A DNA stretch of 26,203 nucleotides from Octopus sinensis (lineage: Eukaryota), in the NCBI RefSeq assembly GCF_006345805.1, contig NW_021835636.1, positions 1 to 26,203 on the forward strand, read 5' to 3'. Positions 108-26,203 of the stretch are shown piece after piece. Position 1 is the first letter of the stretch, and each line of letters starts with the position of its first letter. The position numbers and the translations under genes were made by a program. The notes beneath the pieces were generated by a model. It searched no databases and had not been told where the DNA came from. It was given only the letters and a program-made list of their open reading frames with translations.

Positions 108-439
108 ATAAATATATGAGTGCAATTATGAAGGTGTTTAATCTGTACTAGTGCATGTGTGTGTATATATATGTATATATATATATATATATACATATAT
201 ATTACATTATATAAAAGGGCTTAGTAAAATAAATTACTTTGCCGCATACTGAACTCATTAGGATTAGCAGCCAAAAAACTTTTCCAAAGCTATTTCTAAT
301 ACTTAAAGAAAATCTCTCTCATATATAGTGTTTGCTTAATTCAACTCACAAAAGTTTGGGGGTAAGGACATCGAAAAATCAAATGCTAAGGTTATTTGAG
401 AACGTACGTTTCAATAATTAATTTTGCCCTCAATTGTTG

Positions 440-443
<4 letters not shown>

Positions 444-509
<66 letters not shown>
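444..509. repeat. (TA)n(GATA)n microsatellite
   Basis: Direct reading. Confidence 0.95.
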
Positions 510-1766: not shown

Positions 1767-3137
1767 CACCTATACACACATAGAAATGTATATACACACA
1801 GACATGTATGTATGTGTATATCCATCTATATATACATACATAAAGATGTATACACACACACACACTCATGAGGAGGCAATGCCTACTACTCCCGGATATA
1901 TTATAAGTATCCTCTTAACTGTTGCCATATCTTCATTGCTGTTCGAGCGAAGCAGACTCACAGAATATTTCTGAGACAGAAAGACTTCAAGCCAGTATCA
2001 AAACCCAATAACCAACCCTGGTAAATAATATTCTTCTCCTATTTATTTAACACACAATTTACCACCACATTTACATTGCTAAACATTCATTAGACTTATT
2101 TCAAACATAAATATACTGTTATATAGATATTGTTTTATTTTCACACACCATCTTATAGACTAGACGTTGTTTAGACATTTTACATTGTCACATCACAAGT
2201 AAAACCTTTCATTTCCAGAATATAATATAAAATATGGTTGTGTTATAACTATGTCAAAACTATTTGATGGAAATGTTCATCTAAGGATACATCATTTTAC
2301 GTAGTTTAAAGTGGATTTCTAAGTCTCAAGTGAAATTTAAAATTTGCAAATTAATTTCATGGCAGATAAATTAATTGGTTATTTTTCATAAACTTAATTT
2401 TTTAAAAGCTTAGTTTATATATATATTTTCTCTCTCAGCACATCTTTATCCTACATCAACATTTTAATGTGCAATGCATTAAATATGTTTTCTCACCATC
2501 TTCGATATTATTTATCAGATGGATGGCTTCTGAGAATTACTTCACATTGTCTGCAATAATTATAAACTCTATTACAAACCAACAACAAAGTCTCCCCAAA
2601 ATGCCCTTAAAAACATATTAGATAATAACACATTGGTGAGGTCATGGCTAGAATGTCTGACTATAGGGTGACTAGATAACAATTAACTTTCATCAACAGA
2701 AGCCATAATTTTAATTGATTTTAAACAAATATATTTGTTACATTTCAAATGTAATGTTTATAAAAATAATTTTAATATTTCAACTTTATAAATTGTATTC
2801 TGACATTATAAAAGTTAAACATCCTATTAAATTTTAAAAGATTATAGTTTTGATATATTTTTATAAATTACATTTAAATATTGTATTTGAAGGAATAATC
2901 TATGTTATAATTTGGTAAATTTAGAAATATTCTTGGAGATTTCTGTGGAATTATCAGCTTGGTTGAGAAATAGAATAGTGATGGTTTTTTTTTTAAGTGT
3001 AGATTTATGGATGAGAAAGACATGAATAATAATTGAAGAGAGGGTGTGTCATTTATAGAGATAGGTTAACAGACTAAATGGTGGTGGTCGTGGTGAAGTA
3101 GAGATTCCAAGTTATGTATGTAATGTGTGGCTGATGT

Positions 3138-3190: not shown

Positions 3191-3660
3191 GTATTTAACT
3201 GATCGTATTAGCACCACAATTTCTTTTTAAGTCCGGTAAATATTTTAACCGAATCTATTTGTGGATCAGCTAAATTAGGAAATGGAGTTGATATTTTAAT
3301 TAAACAGCAAGTACTAATGATTAAATGATGGAAAGAATATATATATATATAAAGTGAGAGAGAGAGAGAGATACACACTTGTATACATACATATATACAC
3401 ACACTCTTCACATTTGTGCTAATTTCCTCCAACCATTTTATAAACTATAAAAAATGTGTCCAGGATTTCAAATACTTTTACAAGAAGAGAAAGTTTATAT
3501 TTTTTTGAACAATTTCAAAAATATTTGATGAATTCTAAAGAAAGAAAATGTAAATTATATTTAATGACAAAAGGTTTTAGATTTTGTTTCATGGAAAATT
3601 CAAAATTTCTAAATCAATTTTACAGAAATATAAGCTAAGAAATCAAATAGGTACGTAATT

Positions 3661-3868
3661 GTGTCTTTATTTTTGTCCCACCAACAGTGCTTGACAACCG
3701 ATGTTGGTGTGTTTACATCCCTGTAACTTAAAAGTTCAGCAAAAGACAACAATAGAATAAGTACTAGGCTTATAAAGAATAAGTCCTGGGTTCGATTTGC
3801 TCGACTAAAGGTGGTGCTCCAGTATGGCCACAGTCAAATGACTGAAACAAGTATAAGAATAAAAGAAT
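3661..3868 (+). mobile_element. SINE family A, 3' half
   Basis: gcttgacaaccgatgttggtgtgtttac...gaataagtactaggctt...ggtgctccag...actgaaacaagta. Confidence 0.85.
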
Positions 3869-3886
3869 ATATATATATATACATAC

Positions 3887-4262
3887 AGGCGCTGGAGTGG
3901 CTGTGTGGTAAGTAGCTTGCTTACCACCCACATGGTTCCGGGTTCAGTGGCATCTTGGGCAAGTGTCTTCTACTATAGCCTCGGGCTGACCAAAGCCTTG
4001 TGAGTGGATTCGGCAGACGGAAACTCAAAGAAGCCTGTCGTATATATATGTATGTATGTATGTTTGTTTGTCCTCCTAGCATTGCTTGACAACCGATGCT
4101 GGTGTGTTTACGTCCCCGTCACTTATCGGTTCAGCAAAATACATCAATAGAATAAGTACTAGGCATACAAAGAATAAGTCCCAGGGTCGATTTGCTTGAC
4201 TAAAGGCAGTGCTCCAGCATGACCGCAGTCAAATGACAGAAACAAGTAAAAGAGTAAAAGAG
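3887..4262 (+). mobile_element. SINE family A, full length (tRNA-derived head)
   Basis: A-box-like tggctgtgtgg and B-box-like ggttcagt head, central TA/TG microsatellite, (aagagta) tail. Head-to-tail with the preceding half copy. Confidence 0.9.

Positions 4263-4699: not shown

Positions 4700-4747
<48 letters not shown>
4494..4747 (+). mobile_element. SINE family C (CORE-like), array copy 1, (ATT)n tail
   Basis: gagctggcagaatcgttagc...ttctgagttcaaatt...ttcatcctttcagggtcaataaaataagtacc. The central block resembles the CORE domain as I recall it. Confidence 0.85.
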
Positions 4748-4907
4748 GACTCATCTGCGACTACATTCTGAGTTCAAATTCCACCAAGGTCACCTTTGCC
4801 TTTCATCCTTTTGGGGTCGATTCAATAAGTTCCAGCTATGCACTGGAGGCGATGTAATTTACTAGTCCCCTCACCCCAAATTTCAGGCCTTGTGCCTATA
4901 GTAAGAG

Positions 4908-4976
<69 letters not shown>

Positions 4977-4978
4977 AT
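4748..4978 (+). mobile_element. SINE family C, array copy 2 (5'-truncated), long (ATT)n tail
   Basis: cattctgagttcaaattccaccaagg...tttcatcctttggggtcga...aaatttcaggccttgtgcctatagta then about 22 ATT units. Confidence 0.85.
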
Positions 4979-4980
4979 TA

Positions 4981-7159: not shown

Positions 7160-7470
7160 TTTGGAGGTATATTCCCAGACCTCCAAAAACCACTTTGATG
7201 AGTGTAATCTCTCGGACCTTGAGTCCCTACTGTCACGCCCCTATCACCCCTACCTCTATCTTTCCTCTCTCAATCACTCTCTCTTCTTCTTTTTACTCTA
7301 CTATCTTACTGCTGTGACAAAGATTGGCAGTAAATCTCTTCTCTTCACCATTCTTCCAATGAAACTAGGGATGTTACTGGACCTACCTGAGTCTCTCCCC
7401 AACACTCAGCCACTCCTTTTCATATATTTATTACCCTAGATCTCTCACACATTCCAAGGTATATGTGAAA
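7160..7470 (+). mobile_element. Possible degraded LINE ORF2 3' end
   Basis: Pyrimidine-rich block whose broken translation (...DECNLSDLESLLSR...SLFF(L)FY..YY..CC...) loosely resembles the C-terminal region of CR1/Jockey-group RTs. Weak, judged by eye. Confidence 0.3.
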
Positions 7471-7499
7471 CCCAGAGATTGAGGGGAACCTTTAGTTTT

Positions 7500-7690
7500 G
7501 TCAAGGACATGGCGAGCGTCTCTAGCGATGGGGCCATAAGATGCACCCAGTGCACATTGTGCAGTGGTTGGTGTCAGGAAGAGCATCCAGCTGCAGAAAG
7601 AAAACCAGAAAATGTAACTTCAGGCAAGATATTCTTTGAACCATCCAACCCATTCCAGCATGGAAAGTGGGGGTAAATGATGATCATCAT
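7500..7690 (+). mobile_element. SINE family B, diverged
   Basis: gtggttggtgtcaggaagagcatccagctg...gaaccatccaacccattccagcatggaaag...aaatgatgat. Confidence 0.8.
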
Positions 7691-8554
7691 ACATACATAC
7701 AGACGTATGGATGTATAAATATACATATGTGCATCCTTGTGTATATATTATACACATTCATTCTATCATATATACATATATATGTATGTGTATCCTGAAG
7801 AAGGTCTCTTTTATTTTTCATTCCTCCTGGGGTCAATAGAGTAACAGTCATTATTTCATAGACCAAGGAGGCGGTGGAGGATCATTCTGATGATGATGGG
7901 TCACCAGAATGTCATTAAACACCCCCACCAATATTTCCTAATCCACCTCATTAAACCCCCAATACTTCATAATAAACTACACCAAGTTATAACTCCTCAC
8001 CTAACACAAAACAAAACACACTTCACCTGCCAAACCCCTTTTTCATACAAACACACCTTTCTCATTGCTACCCAAACATTGTCCCTTATATTAAAGATAA
8101 TTAAGATGAACCTAACTTTCATTAATTGGGCTTATTCATTAACCAATCTTTATGATCTCAATCAGCAACAAATAATAACGATCCTCTCAACATGCTGTCT
8201 ATCAGTGTGATTATATGAAAGCCCATCTTTGGATAAGCTTTCCGAGTTAATCAATGTTGTGTATGATAATTGTGCGGACTAAATTGAAATGTCAAGAGAT
8301 TTACAGCATTTGTCAGGTTAAGAACAGTTTCATCTCCAGCTTTATTGGTATCTGTTAATCCAGGTAAATATCACGGAAACCAAGCCAACCATGACTGTCA
8401 CATCATTTCCAGTGCATATAATTATTAATAATACTTATATTCCTGATTTGTAGGGACATGGTATTTCATTATGCAACCATAAATTCCTGTAAAATATATT
8501 AAATCGTTTTAGAAGTCAACACCACATTCTACTTTGTTAGCAGTGTTTTTCACA

Positions 8555-8784
8555 TTATTCTATTGATATTCCATAGAAATTATAGTTGGCTCTGATTTTT
8601 TGCTAAAACCTTTCCTATCGAGATGTCAGATGTAAACAAACAATGAGATAAACAATGAGAACAAACAACAGATGTTTTTCTCTTTGATCTCATTGTTTGT
8701 TTCCGTCTGACATTTCGATATGAAATGTTGTAGCAGGAAATCAGTCCTGGCTATAATTTCTACCGATAATATCTGTAGAAATAA
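8555..8784 (+). repeat. Long imperfect inverted repeat / hairpin
   Basis: 8574-8649 pairs with 8687-8762 without indels: 63 Watson-Crick, 7 G.T and 6 other mismatches. Pairing continues outward to about 8555/8784 and inward to a ~5-nt loop. Confidence 0.9.
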
Positions 8785-9180
8785 CCTCAACAAAATATTT
8801 ATATTCCTTCTTACTACAACACTTTTCACCATCACTTATATTCAGTCAATAAAGATAATGGTGTATTTATATCTTCAAGTTTTATTTCTAATGATTATTC
8901 CATTGGAAACAGTTTAAATGTTTAACTTCACTGTCAAATAAACAATTTGTTTAATATATTTAATGAAATGTGTGTTTTCCTTGAAATTCTTTGAATGAAT
9001 CAAGTAAATATTATTTTATCAAAAGCTTTTCACAAAACTAATAAAGTTTTCATTTTATTTCAGCTTTCATGTAAAAATTAGTGAATTTTGAAGAGATAAA
9101 TTGTATTCGAAAGGAAGAAAACAAAATCCACAGAAAAGAATATATTTAACAGAAAAAGATAATAATTCTATATTCATAAA

Positions 9181-10658
9181 ATGGAGAAGATTAATGAAGA
9201 AAACAAAATGTTGGCTCTCATTCCTGCCACAGTCTGTGATACAACAGCAATTTATAAGGAAACTACACCAATTCTTCCCCAAATATTACATACACAAAAC
9301 ACAAAGAAAACAGAAGAACAGGAAAGAAAGACACAAAGAAATCTAAAGAACAGGAAAAGTCCATGTTACCAAGTTTCCTTCATATTGTGACATGTTACCG
9401 AACACTAATCAAAACAGACCACATCAATACGTTTATAGATTATGTAAAGGTTAAATGTAATCACATGGACTCTCTGGGTTTAGATGGATCTCGAATTTTA
9501 CGTAATATCAAATGTAAAATGCCAAGATTTCTGGAAATTGCAGAACAAAATAATGATTTTGTTCACCAAAACCTTGATTGGTTTCAACAAAGACTCTTTG
9601 ACATTTATGTCACCTGTAACCCATACAACCACAAGACCATTGAACCACCAAAAGTAATCACAAAATTTCGTCCTCTTCGGCCAGTTGTGACCAGAGAAGT
9701 AGAGATTGAGGAATCTGGTGAAGACTTAAGCAACCCAATATCCAATATTGTTGTCATACAAGGGGGTATTGTAACATTCCCACTACTGTATGACAATATG
9801 TTGTATAACAAGAGTCGGCAACAGAAATGAAGTTCATTGCTCATCTTCTGTCACTGATTTTACCAGAATCAGTCAAGACACAGTCCTGGCCACCCTCCCA
9901 TTTCGAAAAATGATTCTTATTATCAACCCTTTAAGTTTTGAAATCAAAAGAATTCAGCTAGGATTAATCTTGGTTTCTTATTTGGAACATTCCACGCTTA
10001 TAGGTGTAGAAATGTTTGGTCAGACCATATACATCATTGACTGGGAAGAGAATAGAATAAAATACGAATTCATAACGAAAGAAACCCTTCAGATATTGCT
10101 GTAGGAGCACAAAATAAACTCTTAGTATCCTTTTCCAATATTAACAGGGTTACCTGTTACAATGTGGATGGCCAGCAGTTATTTGAGGTGGATACCAATT
10201 CCCTGGACATTCCAAGCCACATCTCTGTGTACCAAAACCATTTTTATGTCCTTCAGGGACATATTATTTATCGGATTTCAGGTACAGGTGCTGTGACAAC
10301 AAGAGAAATTGGCATGAAATGCCGCCATATTTCTGTTGGCAAAGAAAACATTTTTGTAACCGATTATTTTGATGTCCTTCATATCATTGGAACAAATGAA
10401 GACTTTTGGCCCAGGCAGTCACATAACCCCCAGCTATGGACCCCAACATTGAACAACTATATTTATATTGAGGATTGCTACAACATTACAAATATTCTAC
10501 CTATGTCTACATCTTCTATATTAATAATTTACAAAAACAAGAAAGCTAAATTATTCACTGAACGGGGAAATAATTAACCAAAATAATTCAGTTTTCCTTG
10601 AGCTTCCTTCTTCTGTTGTAGAATAAACGCAAACAGGTTCCTGGTATTTTATCCTGAA
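9181..10658 (+). pseudogene. Frameshifted 5' portion of the same propeller gene (assembly error or true disruption)
   Basis: ORFs 9181-9390, 9363-9830, 9790-10104 and 10164-10577 join in frame after restoring 1 nt at 9327-9329, 2 nt at 9804-9807, 1 nt at 10082-10084, 2 nt at 10561-10562 and 1 nt at 10616-10617. The repaired junctions give blade motifs: NMLYITRVGN (cf. CLLYISEEGD), ENPSDIAVGAQNKLLVSFSNINRVTCYNVDGQQLF, KLFTENGEII (cf. KIFDEDGQLL), LPSSVCRINANRFLVFYP (cf. LPSTATHICRWDSNHIGVILP). Confidence 0.75.
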
Positions 10659-13600
10659 ATGAAAGGGTTTCAGTATATCACCTGTCCAGAACTAAGAAAA
10701 GGCCCTTTAATAAAGGTGCAAACTGGTTACATGAAAATATGTCATATTGTATCAAATAAGTGTCTGGCTGTGACCACCACTGAAAACAAAAGCGAGGTCC
10801 ATATCCTATTGATCAATGAAGATAAAGTTGACATTATAGAAAGAATTTCTCTGGGACATCATAATGTCAGCATTGCTGCAACTCCAATTAATTTTGTAGT
10901 CGTAGATGGAAACGAAAATAAAATGGTATTTTATTCCACATGTGGTGAAGAACTTTTTCAAAAATACCTTCCATTCTATGGCTACCCTCGTCACATCTAC
11001 TCTGATAATGTTTATTTCTATGTCCTCTTCAGGAGACACTCTATTCTCAGATGTTACGATCTATATGGACAAATGAAATGGCAGTGGGAACTGCCTTTCC
11101 CTGTTCACCCTCACATTGCTGTTTTCCAAGGAACTCTTTATGTCCCGGACACTCAACTCAACAGGGTTCTTCTTTACAAGTATCAAGACCGGTCGTCTGG
11201 CTGCCGTTTACCCACGAAAAGTCCTTATATCAGAAATCTAAATCTACGACTCAAAGAAAAGGAGAATGATCAAAAACTTGTCATTGGCGAAATATGTAAT
11301 CTGGCCAATGGACAGTTGGTGGTGTCTGACATCAACCATGATTGCTTGTTGTACATTTCTGAGGAAGGAGACATTGTGTCCAGATTATCTCTGCCGTCTA
11401 CAGCCACACATATATGTCGATGGGATTCTAATCATATAGGAGTCATATTACCCCTACAGAAACAATTAAGGGTCATTGGAAACATATCAAAGACAGTGAG
11501 AAGTGTATCATTAAGGCAGCCTTATGTACGGGTGTGTAAGATGGGTGAATGTGAAATTGTTTGTTATTGTGATAAACCATCACATTTAGACATTTTAGCC
11601 ATCAATTATTATAATCAAGTCGAAGTAATTAAGACAATTAATATCCCTGTGTTTGTGAAATCATTATCAATAGACAAGAAAACAGAAAAGCTATTAATTG
11701 TTACTAGGGGAAAAGCTTTTCAGTACAACACTAGAATAGGTGGTGGTAGTCATGGCAGTGCACGTCGTCAGAGTGGTGGAAGTGATGGTAGTATTAGTAG
11801 TAGTGGTGGTAGTATTAGTAGTGGTGATGGTAGTATTAGTAGTAGTGATGGTATGGTTTCCAGTGATTCAGAGTCCGAAACAGAAGCTTTCTTCAAGGAC
11901 ATTAGTGGTGGTGGTCATGGCGGTCGTCAGATGGTCCCCAGTGTTTTAATGTCCCAAGTGAAACGTCCCCTCAGTCTCCAAGGTGGATCTATTGACCAAA
12001 CGTCTGTTTATCTGATAGACAGAAGCCGTATGTTTGCCATAAACGATCAGAATTTGTTGGTTAATGATCTCGTTACTAATAATCAACTTAATTATTATAT
12101 CGACCTGGTGGATGTATTTTCCAGACACATTTCTCTCAGTGAAATGCTGTCTTCCACTTTATATCTACAGGACCTGACAGTTTCTGATAAAGCCAGACAT
12201 ATTCCTCTCCCTAAACATTTGGGAGACAAAGAACCAGCGAGGATTGATTCTTTGGTTCTTACTGAAAATAATCTGATTGCAGGATGTGACGAGGAGAATG
12301 GAAACATTAAGATATTCACATTGGATGGTCACGTATTGGATTCAATCAAAGTGAATGTTTATAATTGTATTAAAATGTGTCGATGGCAGTCAAACACACT
12401 GGTCATTACGAATTGGGATGATGAAGATGATAAACACCAACTGTTGACATTAAAAGTGGAATTTTTATTGTCGTTGGTAATTTACAAAACGAGAAATAAT
12501 TATAAATGTGTGGCTTCTTTATCGAACAATCAACTGGTTTTTAGTGAATCGAGGGATGTAAGACATTTGTATTTTGTTGATATTGATGAAATACATTCGA
12601 GTGTGAAGGAAATAAAAGAAATAGACATACCTGAACCATTAATAGAGAGAAGAGAAGATGGAAATTTTCCTGATATAATCCTGGATATTAAAGTTACTGA
12701 TGAAGATGTCATCATTGTCTTCAACAGGAGATTCATCATTTTCTTTAACAGTGGTGGTCAGTATTTACATTCAGTCAGACACTACATGAAGAATTATTTT
12801 GCTGATGTTTATGACAGGATGACAATTGATGACAGTTTTTTGTACATTCATGGTCAGTGGGAGAAATGTTTAGGTTCAACTGAATATGGAAACATTTTGT
12901 GTTTGACCCAGAATGGGGAATACAAGAGAATATTTTTAAATGAAAGAATTTATAAAGATAAAGTAGATTTCTCCAGTATAGACTGTAAAGGACCAAGGTT
13001 TGTTGGAAGCCCCAGGAGGGGAAGGAATGAATTGTATGTTGAAGGGTTGTTTATGGTGAATCGAGACAGCTTCCCGGTTGCTCGTTTACAAACAGACGAA
13101 TGTCCTGTTCAAGTAAAAGATTTTGATGTCTCTGAGGAAGGAAAGACAGTTGTGTGTGAAAAAGCCAATAATGGAAATGTTAAAATATTCGATGAAGACG
13201 GCCAGTTGCTATGTCACAGAAATGCTGCAAGTTTAGTTGGTGGTGTGTGTTTTACACAAGAATCACACATAATGGCCACGGTTCCTAAAAGGAAAGAAAT
13301 ATTTCTACTGAATGGAGAAGATTTGCAGACATCTCAAGTTTGGTCGAGTCTCATCCCTTATGGTGTAATATGGAGAAAAGTGGCGGGTATTTACTGGTGT
13401 GTACATAATGAATTGATTGAATGTCATTGCATAAAGATTGATGGGGACCAAGTGAACATTCTGGAATCTGTGTCGTCATTAAATCTTGATTCTGGTCTTC
13501 GTTTCCCTTCCATTACATCTGAAACGAACAAGGAAATATTCAGTAATGAATTAATTAATAAATTGGAATACAGAGGAGGAGATGGAGATGGAGGAGGAAG

Positions 13601-14735
13601 AAGAAGAGGTAAATCAGGTGAAATAATTGGTAATGGTAGATTAAAGGTGAGATGTGGTAATTACATAGCGGAGATTAATAATTCAGGAATTGATGAAATA
13701 TCAGTGAGGAGACTTCCATATAGGACAGCAATGGTCCCTTTTTCCATTCCTGCATTCGAAGAACCTGTTGATTATGATTTGAGGGACATTAGGGACCGGA
13801 ACAGTAAACTAATTAAGTTAGATGAGAATGTGAGTGTGTTGATGTTTCGAGAAAGTGTCACATTAATCAGAACAACAACAACAGTGGACATACTTCAACA
13901 TGAACAACAACAACGACCACCACTGGACATTTGTCGGTGGACAGAGGAATGTTTCATTGTCGCCTTTGGGAGAGAAATGAGGGTCTTCGACAGGGATCTC
14001 CGTCGTTTAAAAACCATCATAACTGAGAAATACTACAACAGGATTTATAAATACAACGACAATCAACTCGTGTGTGGTGGTCATTATATTAGAGACATAA
14101 CTCAAGAAGAGAGAGACAAGAAATACCAAAGAAGATGGGAGAACAACAAGGATTTCTGTTATTGCGATGACCCCAACATCTTTGACCCTTATTATGTGGA
14201 TGTGGTTGATTTTGAAGATGGGAAATGTAAAGATGAAGTGCGTCGTGGGAAGATGAGGAGATTTAGAAGGTTGGAGGGAGACGAAGGGGTGGATGATGTG
14301 GGAGTCACATCTTTTGGTGATGTTGTTCTTGTGAGGAGGGAGATGAAGGAGGAGGGGTTTGGATATTGGGAAGTTTTGTGTTTTGTGGAATGGTTCAGGG
14401 AAAAGTCTTTGGTGAGGAGGATAAGAATAGAAGAAACAATATTTTCTCTTCTGGGATATTATATTCCAAGACCTCATCTGACCATAATTGGTGAATGTGT
14501 TTATATAACAGATTTAGAGAACAATATTTACGAAATACCTCGACATATTGAAGAGGAAACATCTGAAGATGATGAAATCCTGGGATTAAAATATAATCCA
14601 AAATATTTACTCCTCAGAGAGGATGATAATGAAGTCTATGAAGTTCTTGGTTTGGATGTTTCAGACAATTCTTTGATGGTTTTTGGAATTATTCCTGGAC
14701 GTCAATCTTTTGCTTTCTTTTATTTTGACAAATAA
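10659..14735 (+). CDS. Large intronless multi-beta-propeller (NHL-repeat-like) protein; 1358-aa intact 3' portion
   Basis: 4077-bp stop-free frame. Recurrent NHL-like blades: HPHIAVFQGTLYVPDTQLNRVLLY, SIAATPINFVVVDGNENKMVFYSTCGEELF, IGEICNLANGQLVVSDINHDCLLYISEEGDIV, IAGCDEENGNIKIFTLDGHVL, VVCEKANNGNVKIFDEDGQLL. The frame is open upstream of the ATG to 10602, so 10659 is probably not the real start. AATAAA (14731-14736) overlaps the stop codon. Confidence 0.85.
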   Translation: MKGFQYITCPELRKGPLIKVQTGYMKICHIVSNKCLAVTTTENKSEVHILLINEDKVDIIERISLGHHNVSIAATPINFVVVDGNENKMVFYSTCGEELFQKYLPFYGYPRHIYSDNVYFYVLFRRHSILRCYDLYGQMKWQWELPFPVHPHIAVFQGTLYVPDTQLNRVLLYKYQDRSSGCRLPTKSPYIRNLNLRLKEKENDQKLVIGEICNLANGQLVVSDINHDCLLYISEEGDIVSRLSLPSTATHICRWDSNHIGVILPLQKQLRVIGNISKTVRSVSLRQPYVRVCKMGECEIVCYCDKPSHLDILAINYYNQVEVIKTINIPVFVKSLSIDKKTEKLLIVTRGKAFQYNTRIGGGSHGSARRQSGGSDGSISSSGGSISSGDGSISSSDGMVSSDSESETEAFFKDISGGGHGGRQMVPSVLMSQVKRPLSLQGGSIDQTSVYLIDRSRMFAINDQNLLVNDLVTNNQLNYYIDLVDVFSRHISLSEMLSSTLYLQDLTVSDKARHIPLPKHLGDKEPARIDSLVLTENNLIAGCDEENGNIKIFTLDGHVLDSIKVNVYNCIKMCRWQSNTLVITNWDDEDDKHQLLTLKVEFLLSLVIYKTRNNYKCVASLSNNQLVFSESRDVRHLYFVDIDEIHSSVKEIKEIDIPEPLIERREDGNFPDIILDIKVTDEDVIIVFNRRFIIFFNSGGQYLHSVRHYMKNYFADVYDRMTIDDSFLYIHGQWEKCLGSTEYGNILCLTQNGEYKRIFLNERIYKDKVDFSSIDCKGPRFVGSPRRGRNELYVEGLFMVNRDSFPVARLQTDECPVQVKDFDVSEEGKTVVCEKANNGNVKIFDEDGQLLCHRNAASLVGGVCFTQESHIMATVPKRKEIFLLNGEDLQTSQVWSSLIPYGVIWRKVAGIYWCVHNELIECHCIKIDGDQVNILESVSSLNLDSGLRFPSITSETNKEIFSNELINKLEYRGGDGDGGGRRRGKSGEIIGNGRLKVRCGNYIAEINNSGIDEISVRRLPYRTAMVPFSIPAFEEPVDYDLRDIRDRNSKLIKLDENVSVLMFRESVTLIRTTTTVDILQHEQQQRPPLDICRWTEECFIVAFGREMRVFDRDLRRLKTIITEKYYNRIYKYNDNQLVCGGHYIRDITQEERDKKYQRRWENNKDFCYCDDPNIFDPYYVDVVDFEDGKCKDEVRRGKMRRFRRLEGDEGVDDVGVTSFGDVVLVRREMKEEGFGYWEVLCFVEWFREKSLVRRIRIEETIFSLLGYYIPRPHLTIIGECVYITDLENNIYEIPRHIEEETSEDDEILGLKYNPKYLLLREDDNEVYEVLGLDVSDNSLMVFGIIPGRQSFAFFYFDK
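11784..11852 (+). repeat. In-frame 21-bp coding minisatellite (DGSISSS x3)
   Basis: gatggtagtattagtagtagt / ggtggtagtattagtagtggt / gatggtagtattagtagtagt / gatggt. Confidence 0.9.
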
Positions 14736-14788
14736 ATATTTCTAGAAATATTAAACTTCAATCTTCTTCTTCTTCTTCTTCTTGTAAA

Positions 14789-14840
14789 TGGCTTCGCCGG
14801 GAATCGAACCTGCATCGCATACATCGCATTCTACACACTT
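14789..14840 (-). ncRNA. tRNA-derived fragment or SINE-head remnant; not an intact tRNA
   Basis: Minus strand reads gtgtgtagaat...gcaggttcgattcccggcgaagcca: a perfect B-box (GGTTCGATTCC), an acceptor-like 3' strand, then an (AAG)n tract at 14762-14783. No 5' acceptor strand or anticodon arm found. Confidence 0.45.
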
Positions 14841-14979
14841 ATTGTTGTAACATTCCTCAACACTCTCTCTTTGTGCGTGTGTGTATATTTATATACAGTA
14901 TATGTACATGTGTTTATATATATATACACACATATTTAGGCATGTATGTATAGAAATAAGGCTATAAGTATGTATGTTG

Positions 14980-15027
<48 letters not shown>

Positions 15028-15102
15028 GCATGCATGTATGTATTGGAATGTCTGGTCCGAAAGCAGAGACTTTCATAATCATTGATTCTCCATTAAAAGC
15101 AG

Positions 15103-15147
15103 ACGACCACCGCCGTCGTCGTGGTCGTGGTCGTCGTCGTCATCATC

Positions 15148-15179
<32 letters not shown>

Positions 15180-15560
15180 CGTCGTCGTCATCATCACCAT
15201 CATCGTCATCATCGTCGTCGTCATCATCATCACCATCATCGTCATCATCATCATCGTCGTCGTCGTCATCATCATCATCATCATCGTCATCATCATCATC
15301 GTCGTCGTCGTCGTCGTCATCATCATCATCATCAGCATCGTCGTCGTCATCATCATCATATCGTCGTCATCATCATCATCGTCGCCATCATCACCATCGT
15401 CATCATCGTCATCATCATCATCGTCGTCGTGGTCGTCGTCTCCGCCGTCGTCGTCGTCATCATCATCATCATCATCATCACCATCATCATCGTCATCATC
15501 ATCATCATCGTCGTCATCATCATCATCATAATCATCGTCATCATCATCATCGTCGTCATC
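15103..15560. repeat. Compound (CAT)n/(CGT)n trinucleotide array
   Basis: About 150 triplets of CAT and CGT with occasional CAC/CGC/GGT. One phase slip near 15360. Confidence 0.95.
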
Positions 15561-15719
15561 AGCGTTGTGTGTGCGTGTGTGCAGTCTGCATCTGACAGTT
15601 TTTAACGTTTAATAAGAATAGATTGTTGTTGTTGTTGTTGTTGTTGAGTGACATTCCACTGCACACACGCACAAACATTGCCTTTCGTCCTCGTAGGGTT
15701 GTTGTTGTTGTTGTGGGGG

Positions 15720-17808: not shown

Positions 17809-17900
17809 TTGACTCTCTCCCCTATCTATCTAGCCATCTCTCTCTCTATATGTCTATTTTTATGTATATATCATTTATGTATATATATATATATTATATA
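17690..17900. repeat. Compound (CT)/(TCTA)n/(TA)n microsatellite
   Basis: Direct reading. Confidence 0.9.
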
Positions 17901-17907
17901 TTATATC

Positions 17908-18289
17908 CTTTTACTCTTTTACTTGTTTCAGTCATTTGGCTGCGGCCAGCTGGAGCACCGCCTTTAATCGAGCAACTCGATCCCGGGACTTTTTCTTTTG
18001 TAAGCCTAGTACTTATTCTATCGGTCTGTTTTGCCGAACGCTAAGTAACGGGGACGTAAACATCGGTTGTCAAGCAATGCTAGGGGGACAAACACAGACA
18101 CACTCATATATATATATAAATATATACGACGGGCTTCTTTCAGTTTCCATCAAACAAATCCACTCACAGGGCTTTGGTCGGCCCGAGGCAATAGTAGAAG
18201 ACACTTGCCCAAGATGCCACGCAGTGGGACTGTACCCGGAACCATGTGGTTGGTAAACAAGCTACTTACCACACAGCCACTCTGCGCCT
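17908..18289 (-). mobile_element. SINE family A, full length
   Basis: Near-complete reverse complement of 25567-25970. Confidence 0.9.
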
Positions 18290-18296
18290 ACAGCCA

Positions 18297-18297
18297 T

Positions 18298-18330
<33 letters not shown>

Positions 18331-18462
18331 TATATATATATATATATATATAATATATATAATATATATTATATATATATTATATATATATATATATATA
18401 TAATATAATATATATATAGATTTATATATAATATGTATGTATATGTATATATAATATAATAT
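18297..18462. repeat. (CA)n(TA)n microsatellite
   Basis: Direct reading. Confidence 0.95.
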
Positions 18463-19509: not shown

Positions 19510-19671
19510 TATGTATATAACAAGGTAGAATGAACAGAACATTTTCGGCCTCTATTCTAGGACTCAACCAAGTAGAAACACACACTGATCGATCGATAGG
19601 TAGACAGATAGAGAGAAAGAGAGGGAGAGAGGGAGAGATGGATAGACAGACAGAAGACAGATACATAGATA

Positions 19672-19830
19672 GACGCAGGAGTGGCTGTGTGGTACGTAGC
19701 GTGCTTACGAACCACATGCCTCCGGGTTCAGTCCTGCTGCGTGGCACATCTGTAGCCTTGGGCCGACCAAAGCCTTGTGAGTGGATTTGGTAGACGGAAA
19801 CAGAAAGAAGCCCGTCGTATATATATATAT
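19672..19830 (+). mobile_element. SINE family A, 5' half
   Basis: gcaggagtggctgtgtggta...ccgggttcagtcc...aaagccttgtgagtggatttggtagacggaaac. Confidence 0.85.
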
Positions 19831-21390
19831 GTATACATAGACAAACACACGTGTAAGCATACGCACGCACGCACACACACACGTAAGTTTATGCAAGTAT
19901 TATATACTTGCATACACCTGTATAATTATGGCTCTGGTAACATCCTCACAATGAGATTCATAGAAATGTTGTCGCTAAATCCTGTGCATCACAGGCTGCA
20001 ACAGTTACCATTCTCTCACTCCACACGACAGACATGTCTCACCTGCACACTTCATCCTATCAACAACTTCCAACAGAAAATGCCTTCCTTTTATGCGTTG
20101 CATCTCTCCTGAATTCTTACATGTGCAACCAGTAAACATTTAAAAAGTTTAGTCAGCATTTAAATCTAGTCTTGTCGACTGCAGTTTTTGTGCCTCTAGC
20201 AACAAACAGCTCTCCTAAGAGATTTCCTATTCCACTTACGAGAGGCGATTCAAGTCTTTCAGAACCAGCTCCCCTGCAATTCTTGACTTCGTCCCTTGAG
20301 GCAGAGGTTAGGACTCACCTAAAAGACACAAGTGAACGTCTGGAAACAGCAGTCTATATCTGACCAACTCAGACTGGTTTGCCAGCTCCAAAAGGCAACG
20401 AAAAATGCTCATTTTCTAAGAATTCACCCAACAGTGAATCAATATTCTTTACTTAATATCGTCACCTATTTCTTAACGTCTCCATTTTCCTGGTGTATAT
20501 ATTTTATCGCCTGCCGTCTTCTTTCTATCGTTTAAACACAGCAGACACGGCAGAATCGTATCGAAACTGTTCAGAAGTATTTCAGGAGGAAAAAGAAAGC
20601 AAAGCCACCTCAGTGATCAAAAGCAAAATCTATTCAAACAAACCTAAAACATACAAGTCACCATACGACATTATGTGATGTAATATAGTTTTGTGTATAG
20701 AAAGTATTAGATTTGATGTGAACCTTGTTGTTAATGTCAACCAGTGTGTTATGTATTCTTTTGGTTCGAGGTGAGATAATAAACAACTCACTGAAGGCAT
20801 TTTTATGATTCTACCCGTTTCTTTACTTGGCATGTTCACAAACTGTAAATGTACAGCGGAGTGATACACACTGTGCGTATCCGCCTTAGACACAGTTCAT
20901 ACTGTTTACTAATAGTACTAATAGTGGGGATGTATTCATATATACGTATATCTACGCATACACATAGATATGAACGTGTAACATTAATAAACACCCACAT
21001 TACAATTATCTAAAGTGTGTATACATTCGCGTGGGGGACACCCTGTATATATACATGTACAACATGCTACTTTCAGTTTCTAAGAAGTTATAATAGAAAA
21101 TACTTGTTTGTGGTGTGAAGCTGTGAAACGCCTGCACCCGTGTGTGTGTGTGTTAAATAGTGTCCTTCCTTTTATAAAAAGAATTGACGGATTTCGGAAA
21201 TACGTGACTGCTATTTCTAAACATTTGTTTGTCCACATACAAACATTCTTAGGTAGTTCCGCGTAACTTTATCAGATGAGGGGGAAATACTCTGGTTTTC
21301 CACGTGATTTCTATCCCTTGACTAATTCCAATTTGACCGTTTTTTTTTGTCTTTCTTGAAATATTTTCCATTCGTACATTTGACAGTCTA

Positions 21391-23269: not shown

Positions 23270-24000
23270 ACTGACATTTTCAGGCATGCTTCAGTGTGCC
23301 CCATTCCAAATAAAGGCAGCTCGTTTAACCCAATCAAGTATCACGCTATGGCTCTCACCTCAAACATCTCCCAGATAATGAAAACAATGACCTTCTCCAA
23401 CACGTTGAATCCCTCTCTCAGCCCAGTGACCATTAGCACATCTTGTGTTGAGCCAGATCCATTGGGGACCGACGGTTTCTTGTCATTCACCAGCCGGATG
23501 ACATTTCTGAGATATTCAGTAAAAGCCACGTTGTTACCCCAAGACAACAAGAAAACTTTTGTCCCTGTCTGGGATGTGAATCTCCTACAAAAAAAGAAAA
23601 GAAAATCCCACGTATGGTTTCTACCCATTTCGCACCTCTTCAGTCAGTAGCTTCCAATCAGATCACACCATTGCAACTTATGTTGATGGAGCTCATTCCA
23701 TCTCATTCAAAATTAACTCTCGTGTACTTCCAGGGTTTGGTTCTGTCACATCTTCTCTTCCTTCCATAAGCCAATCACCTGCTTATTGCTAAATCCAACA
23801 ATGACCATCCTCATGGAGTCAATATGAACCTTCATTCCTCACCAATCAGCCTCAACCATTCACCCTGGACCACGTCCAAATAAGGGCTGCTCAACTGATT
23901 GGCATTAAACCCCTATAGAACAGACTCTTTACTCTCCGGCATGTTTCCATCATGCCTGTGAAGGTCGCTGTTCATGTCCCTCTCCCATTCAGCAACCACA
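23270..24000 (+). mobile_element. Degraded non-LTR retrotransposon (CR1/Jockey-like) reverse transcriptase remnant
   Basis: Frame-broken RT motifs: HASVCPIPNKGSSFNPIKYHAMALTSNISQIM (cf. A.V.PIPKKGD...NYRPIALTS.ISK), ARSIGD, YGFYP, IATYVDGAHSISFKINS.V.QG.VLS (cf. GVPQGSVLS), LDHVQIRAAQLI. Confidence 0.85.
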
Positions 24001-24394
24001 GATCCGCTCCTCTCTCTCACCTCTCTCAAATCCAAACTTCAGTCCTGGTCTGACCAATCCACGCCGTCCTTCTTTCCTCCCTGAAACATCGACCCACCAT
24101 AATTGTCTTCTCCCTGCTCATATCTTTCTTGCAGGGGTTAGACCAGAACATTAATGACATGAAACTCAATGGTGTTGGAGGGTCTGCAGAGGCCATGGGC
24201 TCTGCCCCGCCTTCCAGACTAAGCAAATAAAAACACATACATACATGCATGATGTATACACACATATACTTGTATATACATACAGCATCTTTCCATAAAT
24301 GCACACTTTCAGCATCCATTAATACAAATACACATCTACACATACATACACACGTAAAAACGTATATAGAGTCTAATACACACACACACACACA

Positions 24395-25243: not shown

Positions 25244-25566
25244 AATATCAGATGACATTGGCATAACTGAAGATACATTCTCATTATTTATCATCTTTTA
25301 AAGACCAAAATGGAAATATTGTACAGAACAGATATATAAGATTGTTTCTATAAATCTATGGCAGAATTCCTCTGATATATTTACTCTGAAATGTGTTATT
25401 AGCAAACCTTCTGGACATCACTGGCTGGAGTGTCTACAAGATGAGCCTATTTTCAGATTAAATGTGGATAAATTTAGTTGTTTTGTGACAAGGGTAACAC
25501 TGGATAGAAATACAGTAATCTAAATATTTGGAAACAAAAGACTATAGAAGCAAAATGAAAATATAT

Positions 25567-25738
25567 AGGGGCAGGAGTGGCTGTGTGGTAAGTAGCTTGC
25601 TAACCAACCACATAGTTCTGGGTTCAGTCCCACTGCGTGGCATCTTGGGCAAGTGTCTTCTGCTATAGCTCCGGGCCAACCAATGCCTTGTGAGTGGATT
25701 TGGTAGACGGAAAATGAAAGAAGCCTGTCATATATATG

Positions 25739-25769
<31 letters not shown>

Positions 25770-25970
25770 TTGTGTGTCTCTGTTTGTCCCCCTAGCATTG
25801 CTTGACAACCGATGCTGGCGTGTTTACGTCCCTGTCACTTAGCAGTTCGGCAAAAAGAGACCAATAGAATAAGTACTGGTCTTACAAAGAATAAGTCCCG
25901 GGGTCGATTTGCTCAACTAAAGGCAGTGCTCCAGCATGGCCGCAGTCAAATGACTGAAACAAGTAAAAGA
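25567..25970 (+). mobile_element. SINE family A, full length
   Basis: Complete head (A/B-box-like), central microsatellite and 3' tail. Ends about 38 bp before the ZNF ATG. Confidence 0.9.
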
Positions 25971-25981
25971 AAAAAATATAA

Positions 25982-26203
<222 letters not shown>

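What the first reader, a model, noticed from the sequence alone, without database searches (positions are those of the whole stretch)
9181..14735. Giant single-exon protein built from about six tandem, highly diverged NHL-type beta-propellers
Seen: a shared module-opening blade recurs at about 9732 (NPISNIVVIQGG...LYITRVGN), 10480 (ITNILPMSTSSILII...KLFTENGEII), 11274 (LVIGEICNLANGQLVVSD...LYISEEGDI), 12231 (PARIDSLVLTENNLIAGCDEENGNIKIFTLDG), 13101 (PVQVKDFDVSEEGKTVVCEKANNGNVKIFDEDG) and about 13770. Spacing is roughly 220-320 aa. In most modules the next blade has a '(I/V)CRW/CF...V.LP.+K.I' pattern, and modules are joined by Pro-rich linkers. Established: NHL proteins (TRIM2/3, TRIM71/LIN-41, Brat, PAM lyase) normally carry one six-bladed propeller, and the Brat and TRIM71 propellers bind RNA. 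Inference: this is a serially amplified, multivalent propeller receptor or scaffold, possibly from the mollusc TRIM-like expansion, with very low inter-module identity as expected for a fast-evolving recognition (immune or RNA-sensing) protein. I do not know a characterised protein with this architecture, but I cannot check novelty.
Basis: partly seen in the sequence, partly recalled or inferred. Interest (0 to 1): 0.8.

Follow-up and report, generated by a model that had tools for sequence, protein, structure and literature searches.

The report
Octopus six-propeller gene family, broken copy
This stretch is a frameshifted copy of an uncharacterised, octopus-only gene family whose ~1,800-residue proteins are chains of six related NHL-like beta-propellers; two of the six vary fast between copies, as binding surfaces of recognition proteins often do.

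Summary
The recurring modules are real. AlphaFold2 models are almost all beta-strand and match multi-propeller proteins. A profile of the module-opening blades finds the NHL domains of TRIM2, TRIM3, TRIM71, Thin, Mei-P26 and Brat in the PDB. No Pfam model, NHL included, reaches its cut-off.

The window does not hold an intact 1853-residue ORF. Five small frameshifting indels lie at 9318-10610, and only 10602-14732 is open. Intact single-exon paralogues of 1,780-1,875 codons exist in Octopus vulgaris. The window is almost certainly an Octopus sinensis unplaced scaffold, where RefSeq annotates only a chimeric 511-residue model.

The family appears restricted to octopods (three Octopus species and Argonauta). 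It lies in clusters among C2H2 zinc-finger genes and has no characterised member. There is no RING, B-box, signal peptide or transmembrane segment.

Between close paralogues, modules A-C give pN/pS of 0.15-0.6. Module D and the second half of F give 1.4-2.3, with changes concentrated in periodic loops. Module E is near-invariant.

Best reading: a cytoplasmic multivalent propeller scaffold with two diversifying recognition modules. The function is inferred, not shown.

The parts
9181..14735 (+). Whole gene-like locus: a frameshifted copy of the octopod six-propeller family. ATG at 9181, stop TAA at 14733-14735.
   Evidence: tblastn of the intact paralogue P0002 covers residues 1-1870 across 9181-14732 in two frames. 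93% nucleotide identity to the P0002 locus over 7220-15452.
9318..10610 (+). Cluster of five frameshifting indels (about 9318-9326, 9775, 10084, 10560, 10610) that break the reading frame.
   Evidence: Pairwise alignments to L001 and L002, three-frame views and the in-frame stop list. No indels in the 1.4 kb upstream flank or in 10611-11755.
10602..14732 (+). The only long open stretch: 1377 codons, or 1358 residues from the ATG at 10659. It covers the end of module B through module F.
   Evidence: All six indels against P0002 in this part are multiples of three.
9181..9719 (+). N-terminal non-propeller region: a disordered Lys/Glu-rich start, then predicted helices (about 9369-9617) and a linker.
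   Evidence: The AF2 model of paralogue P0054 has helices at residues 64-146 with pLDDT about 55. No hhalign similarity to any module. No Pfam hit.
9720..10421 (+). Module A (propeller 1), frameshifted in this copy.
   Evidence: AF2 all-beta domain at residues 189-405, 21 strands, pLDDT about 80. hhalign A-B 80%. dN/dS 0.12-0.31 for 21 of 22 computable pairs, 0.58 for P0005-P0006; WIN3p rows excluded.
10422..11243 (+). Module B (propeller 2). Two frameshifts lie near its start.
   Evidence: AF2 all-beta domain at residues 428-669, 24 strands, pLDDT about 80. hhalign B-C 90% and B-D 93%.
11244..12179 (+). Module C (propeller 3). It is interrupted by a variable Gly/Ser-rich low-complexity insertion (11739-11930) that contains a 21-nt tandem repeat (11781-11853).
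   Evidence: AF2 strands at residues 704-852 plus post-linker strands at 868-901. The post-linker strands reach pLDDT 62-81 only when modelled together with module C and are below 50 when modelled without it. Tandem repeat. hhalign C-F 95.5%. The match to bivalve TRIM-like P0077 falls here.
12180..13058 (+). Module D (propeller 4), hypervariable between paralogues (12180-13028).
   Evidence: AF2 residues 89-371 of the C-part model, 23 strands, pLDDT 70-93. dN/dS 1.0-2.3 among close paralogues. Variable sites concentrate in periodic loops: 1.64 extra residue types per site in loops against 0.67 in strands.
13059..13763 (+). Module E (propeller 5, probably partial), the most conserved part of the family. 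It includes a Gly/Arg-rich spacer at about 13551-13628.
   Evidence: hhalign D-E 93%. It holds many invariant columns. Both dN (0.002-0.04) and dS (0.007-0.08) are very low even between paralogues with dS of 0.3-0.5 in modules D and F. AF2 confidence here is poor, pLDDT 25-70.
13764..14732 (+). Module F (propeller 6) and an acidic C-terminal tail. The second half (14073-14642) is hypervariable.
   Evidence: AF2 residues 572-934, 28 strands, pLDDT 60-94. hhalign C-F 95.5% and D-F 94%. pN/pS 1.4-3.1 in sliding windows over P0002 residues 1650-1830.
7220..9180 (+). Upstream flank shared with paralogous loci. It is part of the duplicated unit and is the presumed promoter and 5' UTR.
   Evidence: 93% identity to L001 from 7220. 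97.5% identity to L002 from 7792.

Best explanation
The locus is one copy of an octopod-restricted, tandemly expanded gene family. The window is most probably from Octopus sinensis. As assembled, the copy is disabled by five frameshifts in its first 1.4 kb.

Intact members encode soluble cytoplasmic proteins of about 1,800 residues from a single coding exon. Each has a short disordered and helical N-terminus followed by six homologous NHL-like beta-propeller modules, A to F. These arose by old internal duplication.

Shown:
- the six-module homology;
- the beta-propeller-type fold;
- the NHL-like blade signature;
- the restriction to octopods and the clustering of the gene copies;
- the split selective regime. 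Modules A-C and E are conserved. Module D and the second half of F are hypervariable in loops, with pN/pS above 1 between young paralogues.

Inferred mechanism: the protein is a multivalent scaffold. The conserved propellers, E above all, would make constant contacts, such as self-assembly or binding an effector partner. The two diversifying propellers would present paralogue-specific binding surfaces for varied ligands. That would make the family a diversified intracellular recognition repertoire. A role in innate immunity, antiviral defence or defence against transposable elements is the leading guess, with RNA as one possible ligand by analogy with TRIM-NHL proteins.

I cannot tell whether this copy's frameshifts are real (a young pseudogene) or local assembly errors.
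For: Architecture:
- AF2 models of both halves are almost entirely beta-strand, in units of 21-28 strands.
- Foldseek top hits are all multi-propeller proteins: IFT-A, LRP4/LRP2, DDB1, SF3B3, Utp21 and Apaf-1, at E = 1e-11 to 1e-21.
- The module-versus-module hhalign network scores 80-95.5%, with a negative control at 1.3% or less.

NHL-like blades:
- The blade profile A5 finds TRIM2 (2e-18), TRIM3 (6e-16), TRIM71 (5e-12), Thin (4e-11), Mei-P26 (1e-9) and Brat (1e-5).
- There are sub-threshold Pfam hits to NHL and SGL.
- The family links to the bivalve RING/B-box/propeller protein P0077. A blade of P0077 matches teneurin NHL repeats at E = 1e-6.

Family and intactness:
- 59 hits, all from Octopus.
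- An exhaustive profile search of 1.84 billion representatives gave only 26 hits. These were Octopus species and Argonauta hians, plus two marginal outsiders.
- Seven O. vulgaris paralogues each have one open exon of 1,778-1,875 codons.

Selection:
- Per-module dN/dS and sliding windows.
- Hypervariable versus conserved regions differ in the ratio of non-synonymous to synonymous changes at p = 2e-5 to 8e-4. pN exceeds pS at p = 0.001-0.09.
- Variation is biased to loops and is periodic.
- All six indels in the 3' part are in frame.

Localisation: no signal peptide or transmembrane segment.

Frameshifts.
Against: - No Pfam propeller family reaches its gathering score in any of 27 members.
- Blade number per module was inferred from strand counts, not from coordinates.
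- AF2 confidence is only moderate (mean pLDDT 64-67). It is poor for module E and for the arrangement of domains in the N-terminal half (pTM 0.36).
- The blade profile also hits one repetitive cyanobacterial WD40 protein (2ymu) more strongly than it hits NHL proteins. The motif is therefore not exclusive to NHL.
- The hypervariable boundaries were chosen from the same data used to test them.
- Pairwise comparisons are not independent. Recombination among paralogues is evident and can bias dN/dS.
- A more divergent pair (P0016-P0017) shows no excess.
- I have no expression, localisation or ligand data, so the recognition function is only an analogy.
- The frameshifts mean that this particular copy may do nothing.
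Confidence: 0.6

Rival explanations
1. The window copy is an intact, functional gene. The five frameshifts are local assembly or polishing errors in a short unplaced scaffold of a multicopy family.
For: - The window matches a 26,203-bp unplaced O. sinensis scaffold.
- Three of the five indels lie in or next to short homopolymer runs: CCC(C), TT(T) and AAG(G).
- The shifted segments contain no nonsense substitutions.
- The remaining 4.1 kb is open, and its indels are all in frame.
- The 5' half is 97.5% identical to an intact O. vulgaris gene.
Against: - Random long-read errors should also appear in the AT-rich flanks and in the 3' 4.1 kb. None is seen there.
- Two of the indels are 2-nt events, which are not typical homopolymer errors.
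- RefSeq did not rescue a full-length model here.
Confidence: 0.4
2. The family consists of RNA-binding post-transcriptional regulators that work like TRIM-NHL proteins (Brat, LIN-41/TRIM71). Several propellers would each bind RNA motifs.
For: The nearest sequence relatives of the blades are the RNA-binding NHL domains of TRIM71, Brat, Mei-P26 and TRIM2/3. The protein is predicted to be cytoplasmic. Arg/Gly-rich and Lys-rich low-complexity spacers are present.
Against: - Similarity is limited to a generic blade motif. No RNA-contacting residues could be compared.
- There is no RING, B-box or filamin domain.
- Conserved regulators are usually single-copy and under purifying selection. They are not found as dozens of paralogues with hypervariable propellers.
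Confidence: 0.15
3. The family is cargo of, or derived from, a mobile or selfish element. Its copy number would reflect transposition rather than host function.
For: - There are many near-identical single-exon copies.
- One gene model is fused to a DUF4371 domain, which is associated with hAT transposases (P0007).
- Interspersed repeats surround the copies.
Against: - No transposase, reverse transcriptase or integrase domain is found in the ORF.
- Homology between loci extends kilobases into both flanks without sharp common ends.
- The copies are clustered on one chromosome.
- ORFs of about 1,800 codons are kept open in four octopod species including Argonauta, with purifying selection on modules A-C and E.
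Confidence: 0.05
4. The family is a structural or scaffolding protein, for example of sperm, cilia or cytoskeleton. The variable regions would simply be under relaxed constraint, not positive selection.
For: - Foldseek's best matches are structural multi-propeller scaffolds such as IFT-A, axonemal WD proteins and DDB1.
- pN/pS in modules D and F is only modestly above 1, and many single-pair tests are not significant.
- Distant pairs give 0.5-0.9.
Against: - pN/pS is at or above 1 in every close pair for modules D and F, 20 of 20 comparisons.
- pN is 3-10 times higher there while pS is similar to the rest of the gene.
- The changes are periodic and biased to loops.
- Housekeeping scaffolds are rarely lineage-restricted with dozens of paralogues.
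Confidence: 0.2

Closest known systems
TRIM-NHL proteins (TRIM2, TRIM3, TRIM71/LIN-41, Brat, Mei-P26, Thin/TRIM32)
   Same: Their blades are the nearest recognisable sequence relatives of this family's blades. The blade profile finds their NHL domains at E = 2e-18 to 1e-5. Both are cytoplasmic. The closest non-octopod hit is a bivalve protein with RING, B-box and propeller.
   Different: This family has no RING, B-box or filamin domain. It has six propeller modules per chain, not one. The Pfam NHL model is not reached. It occurs as dozens of lineage-specific paralogues with hypervariable modules.
Multi-propeller scaffolds: DDB1/SF3B3/CPSF160 (three propellers), IFT-A subunits, WDR90, EML tandem atypical propeller (TAPE) domains, Apaf-1
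   Same: They carry several beta-propellers in one cytoplasmic polypeptide. They are the top Foldseek matches over 700-1000 aligned columns.
   Different: Those are WD40-type or DDB1-type, conserved across eukaryotes and mostly single-copy. There is no detectable sequence relationship. TM-scores are low (0.12-0.23), so the arrangement of domains is not shared.
LDL-receptor family (LRP1, LRP2, LRP4, LRP5/6) with tandem YWTD six-bladed propellers
   Same: They carry four to eight six-bladed propellers in a row on one chain. They rank high in Foldseek for the N-terminal half.
   Different: The LRPs are secreted or membrane proteins with EGF and LDL-A modules between propellers. This family has no signal peptide, transmembrane segment or EGF module and no Ldl_recept_b hit.
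Hypervariable repeat-domain recognition proteins: fungal HET-E/NWD WD40 STAND proteins, TRIM5alpha SPRY, NLR LRRs (recalled from general knowledge)
   Same: All are paralogue-rich and clustered. They show gene conversion or mosaicism, a conserved framework, and surface loops with dN/dS above 1.
   Different: No NACHT/NB-ARC, SPRY or LRR domain is present. An immune role is not shown. The resemblance is only in the mode of evolution.

Membership tests
NHL repeat / six-bladed NHL propeller (Pfam PF01436, clan Beta_propeller) | Pfam NHL model matched at or above its gathering score | tested here: not met
   No hit in the window ORF. The best hit among 27 members is 18.5 bits against a cut-off of 20, in the divergent paralogue P0067 only.
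NHL repeat / six-bladed NHL propeller | Blade sequence signature shared with bona fide NHL domains (reverse profile search) | tested here: met
   The profile of the two opening blades of modules C-F (A5) finds TRIM2, TRIM3, TRIM71, Thin, Mei-P26 and Brat NHL structures at E = 2e-18 to 1e-5, with 1-4 matched blades each. Caveat: the repetitive WD40 protein 2ymu scores higher.
NHL repeat / six-bladed NHL propeller | Closed propeller of six four-stranded blades, about 270-300 residues | tested here: inconclusive
   The modules are 217-363 residues with 21-28 predicted strands. Foldseek says propeller. Module E is poorly modelled.
TRIM (tripartite motif) proteins | N-terminal RING, B-box and coiled coil | tested here: not met
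   No RING or B-box hit in any member. The N-terminal 180 residues have no Cys/His zinc-binding pattern. Only a short helical region is predicted.
WD40 repeat proteins | Pfam WD40 or WD40-like model matched | tested here: not met
   Only sub-threshold hits, such as the WDR90 fourth propeller at 12.9 bits against a cut-off of 50.
LDL-receptor class B (YWTD) propeller arrays | YWTD repeats with EGF spacers on a secreted or membrane protein | tested here: not met
   No Ldl_recept_b or EGF hit. No signal peptide or transmembrane segment. The resemblance is in fold only.
Octopod six-propeller family (unnamed; e.g. O. bimaculoides LOC106868082, O. sinensis LOC118768466, O. vulgaris CAI97xxxxx proteins) | Colinear similarity over the whole length to family members | tested here: met
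   tblastn of P0002 covers residues 1-1870 at 82.6% identity over the main high-scoring pair (residues 25-1870), once frames are followed. In the hit table the top hit (P0001) is 91% identical and values reach 97% for P0056. Nucleotide identity to paralogous loci, flanks included, is 93-97.5%.
Octopod six-propeller family | One uninterrupted coding exon of about 1,800 codons | tested here: not met
   Five frameshifts and eight in-frame stops in 9318-10610. Seven O. vulgaris paralogues are intact.

The most novel reading that the evidence does not exclude
Octopods have evolved their own intracellular recognition repertoire. It would be a clustered family of six-propeller proteins in which two NHL-like propellers diversify under positive selection while gene conversion keeps a constant core. 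This would be analogous in function to TRIM5/NLR or fungal HET-type hypervariable sensors, but built from a different domain. It would act against viruses, transposons or other non-self nucleic acids or proteins.
Probability: 0.2. Interest if true: 0.8.

Novelty: new variant of a known kind. Interest (0 to 1): 0.55.

Why it matters
Cephalopod innate immunity and lineage-specific gene novelty are poorly understood. The well-known octopus expansions are protocadherins, C2H2 zinc fingers and GPCRs. This would add an unstudied, octopod-only family of dozens of genes. Its architecture, six NHL-like propellers in one cytoplasmic chain, has no characterised counterpart. It also shows a clear split between conserved and diversifying modules.

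That makes it a concrete, testable candidate for a recognition system. It is also a natural example of how propeller domains are serially duplicated and then specialised.

For genome annotation, the family is mis-modelled in current annotations. Models are chimeric, truncated or fused to zinc-finger or MIB2-like genes.

This particular locus adds little, because it is a broken copy.

Tried and rejected
- **Alternative genetic code or short introns as the cause of the in-frame stops.** Rejected. The stops are a mix of TGA, TAA and TAG. The homologous protein sequence continues in another frame across each break.
- **Single-sequence Pfam and PDB searches of the ORF.** Nothing significant.
- **Whole-family profile against the PDB.** Only non-significant TRIM71, TRIM3 and TRIM2 hits at E = 0.28-3. 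This was superseded by the blade profile.
- **Building an NHL outgroup profile from the propeller of bivalve P0077.** The search returned only P0077 itself.
- **Full-family profile search for non-octopod relatives with names.** Octopus only.
- **Literature searches** by gene identifiers and by topic. Nothing on this family.
- **Precomputed Pfam PF23381 flagged on P0040.** Not reproduced on rescanning.
- **ORF 14946-15605 with a weak Promethin hit.** Rejected as an artefact of a (TCA)141 microsatellite.
- **tRNA-derived SINE check.** No tRNA-like sequence found.
- **Identity of the window with an annotated O. vulgaris gene.** Rejected, because no protein matches at 100%. The O. sinensis model P0066 does map exon by exon.


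Full report
**1. What is in the window**

In the frame that carries most of the similarity, the sequence is open at 9258-9827, 10056-10574 and 10602-14732. The stop TAA is at 14733. Between these stretches lie eight in-frame stops of mixed type: TGA, TAG and TAA.

Comparison with an intact paralogue explains the stops. The paralogue is P0002 of Octopus vulgaris, 1870 residues. Its protein sequence continues in a different frame across each break. Five small indels shift the frame, at about 9318-9326, 9775, 10084, 10560 and 10610.

As assembled, the ATG at 9181 cannot reach the long ORF. The longest real ORF is 10659-14735, 1358 residues.

In the 3' 4.1 kb, all six indels relative to P0002 are multiples of three. 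Against the closest locus, L002, identity is 97.5% over 7792-11777. There are 88 substitutions, and the five frameshifting indels all fall inside 9318-10610. None occurs in the 1.4 kb upstream flank.

This clustering is odd both for random decay and for random sequencing error. I cannot decide between a young pseudogene and a local assembly fault.

**2. Where the window comes from**

P0066 is XP_036355930.1, LOC118761868 of Octopus sinensis, 511 residues. It sits on a contig of exactly 26,203 bp, the length of the window. It maps in four pieces:

| Window coordinates | Identity |
|---|---|
| 11073-11924 | 94.7% over 284 columns; this alignment runs across a 15-residue stretch that the model skips |
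| 12693-12998 | 99.0% |
| 23282-23611 | 100% |
| 24132-24227 | 96.9% |

The window is thus almost certainly an unplaced O. sinensis scaffold. RefSeq annotates only a chimeric spliced model there.

**3. The family**

- A search with the open 1377-residue stretch gave 59 hits. All are from O. vulgaris, O. sinensis or O. bimaculoides, and all are 'uncharacterized' or 'hypothetical'. Their lengths run up to about 1,900 residues.
- An exhaustive HMM search of 1.84 billion cluster representatives used a 961-position profile of the N-terminal half. It found only 26 proteins. They are Octopus species, Argonauta hians (1913 and 1925 residues), a divergent paralogue on another chromosome (LOC106882419), and two marginal outsiders. 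The outsiders are the bivalve protein P0077 (E = 2e-5) and a bacterial PQQ-propeller kinase (E = 7e-5).
- A full-length family profile search again returned only Octopus.
- Seven O. vulgaris members were fetched. Each has one open exon of 1,778-1,875 codons. Some have 2-30 extra residues from an upstream exon.
- They lie at 9.58, 9.80, 10.31, 21.88-22.04 and 22.66 Mb of the 29-Mb chromosome record OX597841.1. C2H2 zinc-finger genes are interspersed among them. The window also ends in a zinc-finger array, at 26057-26203.
- Homology between loci extends for kilobases into both flanks. The copies therefore arose by segmental or tandem duplication, not by transposition of the ORF.

**4. Fold**

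AlphaFold2 was run on two halves, each with a 35-sequence family alignment.

| Half | Sequence modelled | Mean pLDDT | pTM |
|---|---|---|---|
| C-terminal | window 11931-14732 | 64.5 | 0.66 |
| N-terminal | paralogue P0054 | 67.0 | 0.36 |

After a disordered start and helices at residues 64-146, everything is beta-strand. The strands fall into these units:

| Module | Residues | Strands | pLDDT |
|---|---|---|---|
| A | 189-405 (N-terminal model) | 21 | about 80 |
| B | 428-669 (N-terminal model) | 24 | about 80 |
| C | 704-852, plus 868-901 after a Gly-rich insertion (N-terminal model) | 19 | 64-83 by 10-residue block over 704-850; 62-81 after the insertion |
| D | 89-371 (C-terminal model) | 23 | 70-93 |
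| E | 416-515 (C-terminal model) | 10 | 25-70 |
| F | 572-934 (C-terminal model) | 28 | 60-94 |

The post-linker strands of module C are confident only when modelled together with C. From this I infer that the Gly/Ser-rich stretch is an insertion inside propeller 3, not a spacer between domains.

Foldseek against the PDB returned only multi-propeller proteins at the top: IFT-A subunits, LRP4/LRP2, DDB1, SF3B3, Utp21, Apaf-1 and axonemal WD proteins. E-values ran from 1e-11 to 1e-21 over 700-1000 columns. TM-scores are low, as expected when only the domains match and not their arrangement.

Tandem propellers are supported. The exact blade number per module is not established.

**5. Are the modules homologous, and are they NHL-type?**

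Profile-profile comparison used a 27-sequence alignment that includes Argonauta and the divergent paralogue. It links all six modules:

| Pair | hhalign probability |
|---|---|
| A-B | 80% |
| B-C | 90% |
| B-D | 93% |
| C-D | 89% |
| C-F | 95.5% |
| D-E | 93% |
| D-F | 94% |

The alignments span 83-195 columns. The N-terminal region scores at most 1.3% against every module.

Pfam gives nothing above threshold in 27 members:

| Pfam model | Result |
|---|---|
| NHL | 18.5 bits against a cut-off of 20, in one member |
| SGL | 17 bits, in the window ORF |
| DUF4934 | sub-threshold in 11 members |

A 70-position profile of the two opening blades gives a clearer answer. It finds the NHL domains of these proteins:

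| PDB protein | E-value |
|---|---|
| TRIM2 | 2e-18 |
| TRIM3 | 6e-16 |
| TRIM71 | 5e-12 |
| Thin | 4e-11 |
| Mei-P26 | 1e-9 |
| Brat | 1e-5 |

Among the thousands of WD40 chains in the PDB, only one highly repetitive cyanobacterial protein (2ymu) and its engineered derivatives score. They score higher, because 12-14 identical repeats add up.

The only animal relative outside octopods is P0077 from the mussel Potamilus. It has a RING, a B-box and a propeller. One of its blades matches teneurin NHL repeats at E = 1e-6. Its first two blades align to the start of module C at 83% probability and 37% identity.

I conclude that the blades are NHL-like. Descent from a mollusc TRIM-NHL-type propeller is plausible but thinly supported. 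The family is not a TRIM protein, because it has no RING or B-box.

**6. Selection**

Codon alignments covered seven O. vulgaris paralogues and the window's open part.

- Modules A, B and C give dN/dS of 0.12-0.8 across all pairs.
- Among the five closely related copies, module D (P0002 residues 1021-1300; window 12180-13028) gives pN/pS of about 1.4-2.3. So does the second half of F (residues 1650-1840; window 14073-14642).
- In those regions pN is 3-10 times higher than elsewhere, while pS is similar.
- The ratio of non-synonymous to synonymous changes differs between hypervariable and conserved parts at p = 2e-5 to 8e-4. pN exceeds pS at p = 0.001-0.09 per pair.

Caveats apply. The region boundaries were chosen from the same data. 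The pairs are not independent. Recombination is evident. A more distant pair shows no excess.

In module D the variable positions cluster in inter-strand loops, with a spacing of roughly one or two clusters per blade. Loops carry 1.64 extra residue types per site, against 0.67 in strands.

Module E is the opposite. It holds many of the invariant columns. Both dN and dS are very low, even between paralogues whose neighbouring modules have dS of 0.3-0.5. This implies homogenisation by gene conversion, very strong constraint, or both.

Module A and the N-terminus fall into two deep sequence types, with dS of about 0.03-0.12 against 0.73-0.80. These types are shuffled among the paralogues. The family therefore evolves as a mosaic.

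**7. Likely mechanism**

The proteins have no signal peptide or hydrophobic segment. They should be soluble and intracellular.

The most economical reading is a multivalent scaffold. Conserved propellers, E above all, would make constant contacts. Two propellers would expose paralogue-specific loop surfaces for ligand recognition.

This mode of evolution resembles hypervariable recognition families. An immune, antiviral or anti-transposon role is therefore the leading hypothesis, and RNA is one candidate ligand by analogy with TRIM-NHL proteins. None of this was tested. I give the recognition-repertoire reading about 0.2-0.3 and the architectural description about 0.8.

**8. Novelty**

Tandem propellers, NHL propellers and diversifying paralogue families are all known kinds. 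Against that:

- A chain of six NHL-like propellers without any other recognisable domain has no characterised counterpart that I could find.
- The family is restricted to octopods.
- I found no literature on it.

I rate it a new variant of a known kind, of moderate interest. The specific locus in the window is a damaged copy.

Noticed in passing
window 26057-26203 (+); L001 19390-22767: The window ends in the start of a C2H2 zinc-finger array. In O. vulgaris the family's copies are interleaved with C2H2 zinc-finger genes on chromosome record OX597841.1, and some gene models fuse the two (P0008).
   Followed up: partly
window 3867-4261, 17893-18371 and 25561-25983; also 885-1107, 3659-3876 and 19662-19839: An interspersed repeat of about 420 bp occurs several times in the window, in both orientations. 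It also occurs many times in every paralogous locus (up to 8 copies in L005). ARAGORN finds no tRNA-like part.
   Followed up: partly
window 15140-15561 (ORF 14946-15605): A (TCA)141 microsatellite creates a spurious 219-residue ORF with a weak sub-threshold Promethin hit.
   Followed up: yes
window 11073-11924, 12693-12998, 23282-23611, 24132-24227: The RefSeq model LOC118761868 (511 residues) splices two pieces of the propeller ORF onto two downstream exons with no recognisable domain. It looks like a chimeric prediction caused by the broken frame.
   Followed up: partly
window 13059-13763 (module E): Synonymous divergence between paralogues collapses here (dS 0.007-0.08, against 0.3-0.5 in the neighbouring modules). 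The cause is gene conversion or constraint at the nucleotide level. This most conserved module is also the one AlphaFold2 models worst (pLDDT 25-70).
   Followed up: partly
P0002 residues 1-415 (window 9181-10421) across paralogues: The N-terminus and module A exist as two deeply diverged sequence types (dS about 0.05-0.1 within a type, 0.7-1.0 between types). The types are distributed independently of the relatedness of the rest of the gene, so the copies are recombinant mosaics.
   Followed up: partly
window 7792-11777 compared with 11905-15561: The 5' half is 97.5% identical to the O. vulgaris P0001 locus, which looks like orthologue-level divergence. The 3' half is only 91% identical to it and is closest to a different paralogue (L003, 94.5%). 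The window copy is itself a mosaic.
   Followed up: partly
L001 20137-22589: A second, partial family copy lies about 4.5 kb downstream of the intact P0002 gene. It matches window 10977-14107 at 75-96% identity and sits inside the range of a model annotated as a zinc-finger gene.
   Followed up: no
P0042 and P0047 C-termini; P0061 module F: Lineage-specific low-complexity expansions occur in three members. P0042 and P0047 have acidic 'ESEDQIS' tandem repeats before the last blade. The Argonauta protein P0061 has a long 'TPPLQQ(H)Y' repeat insertion in the first blades of module F.
   Followed up: no
P0070 and P0087 (O. vulgaris 'MIB2-like' models): These gene models carry ankyrin repeats and a RING, and P0070 ends in a fragment of this family's N-terminal region (E = 1.7e-52). 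This is probably an annotation fusion, but it is worth checking as a possible RING-linked relative.
   Followed up: partly
window 2001-3000: A very AT-rich kilobase (GC 25%, against 33-44% elsewhere). TA-rich and ATT/TAT microsatellites are scattered elsewhere in the window (164-509, 4701-4980).
   Followed up: no
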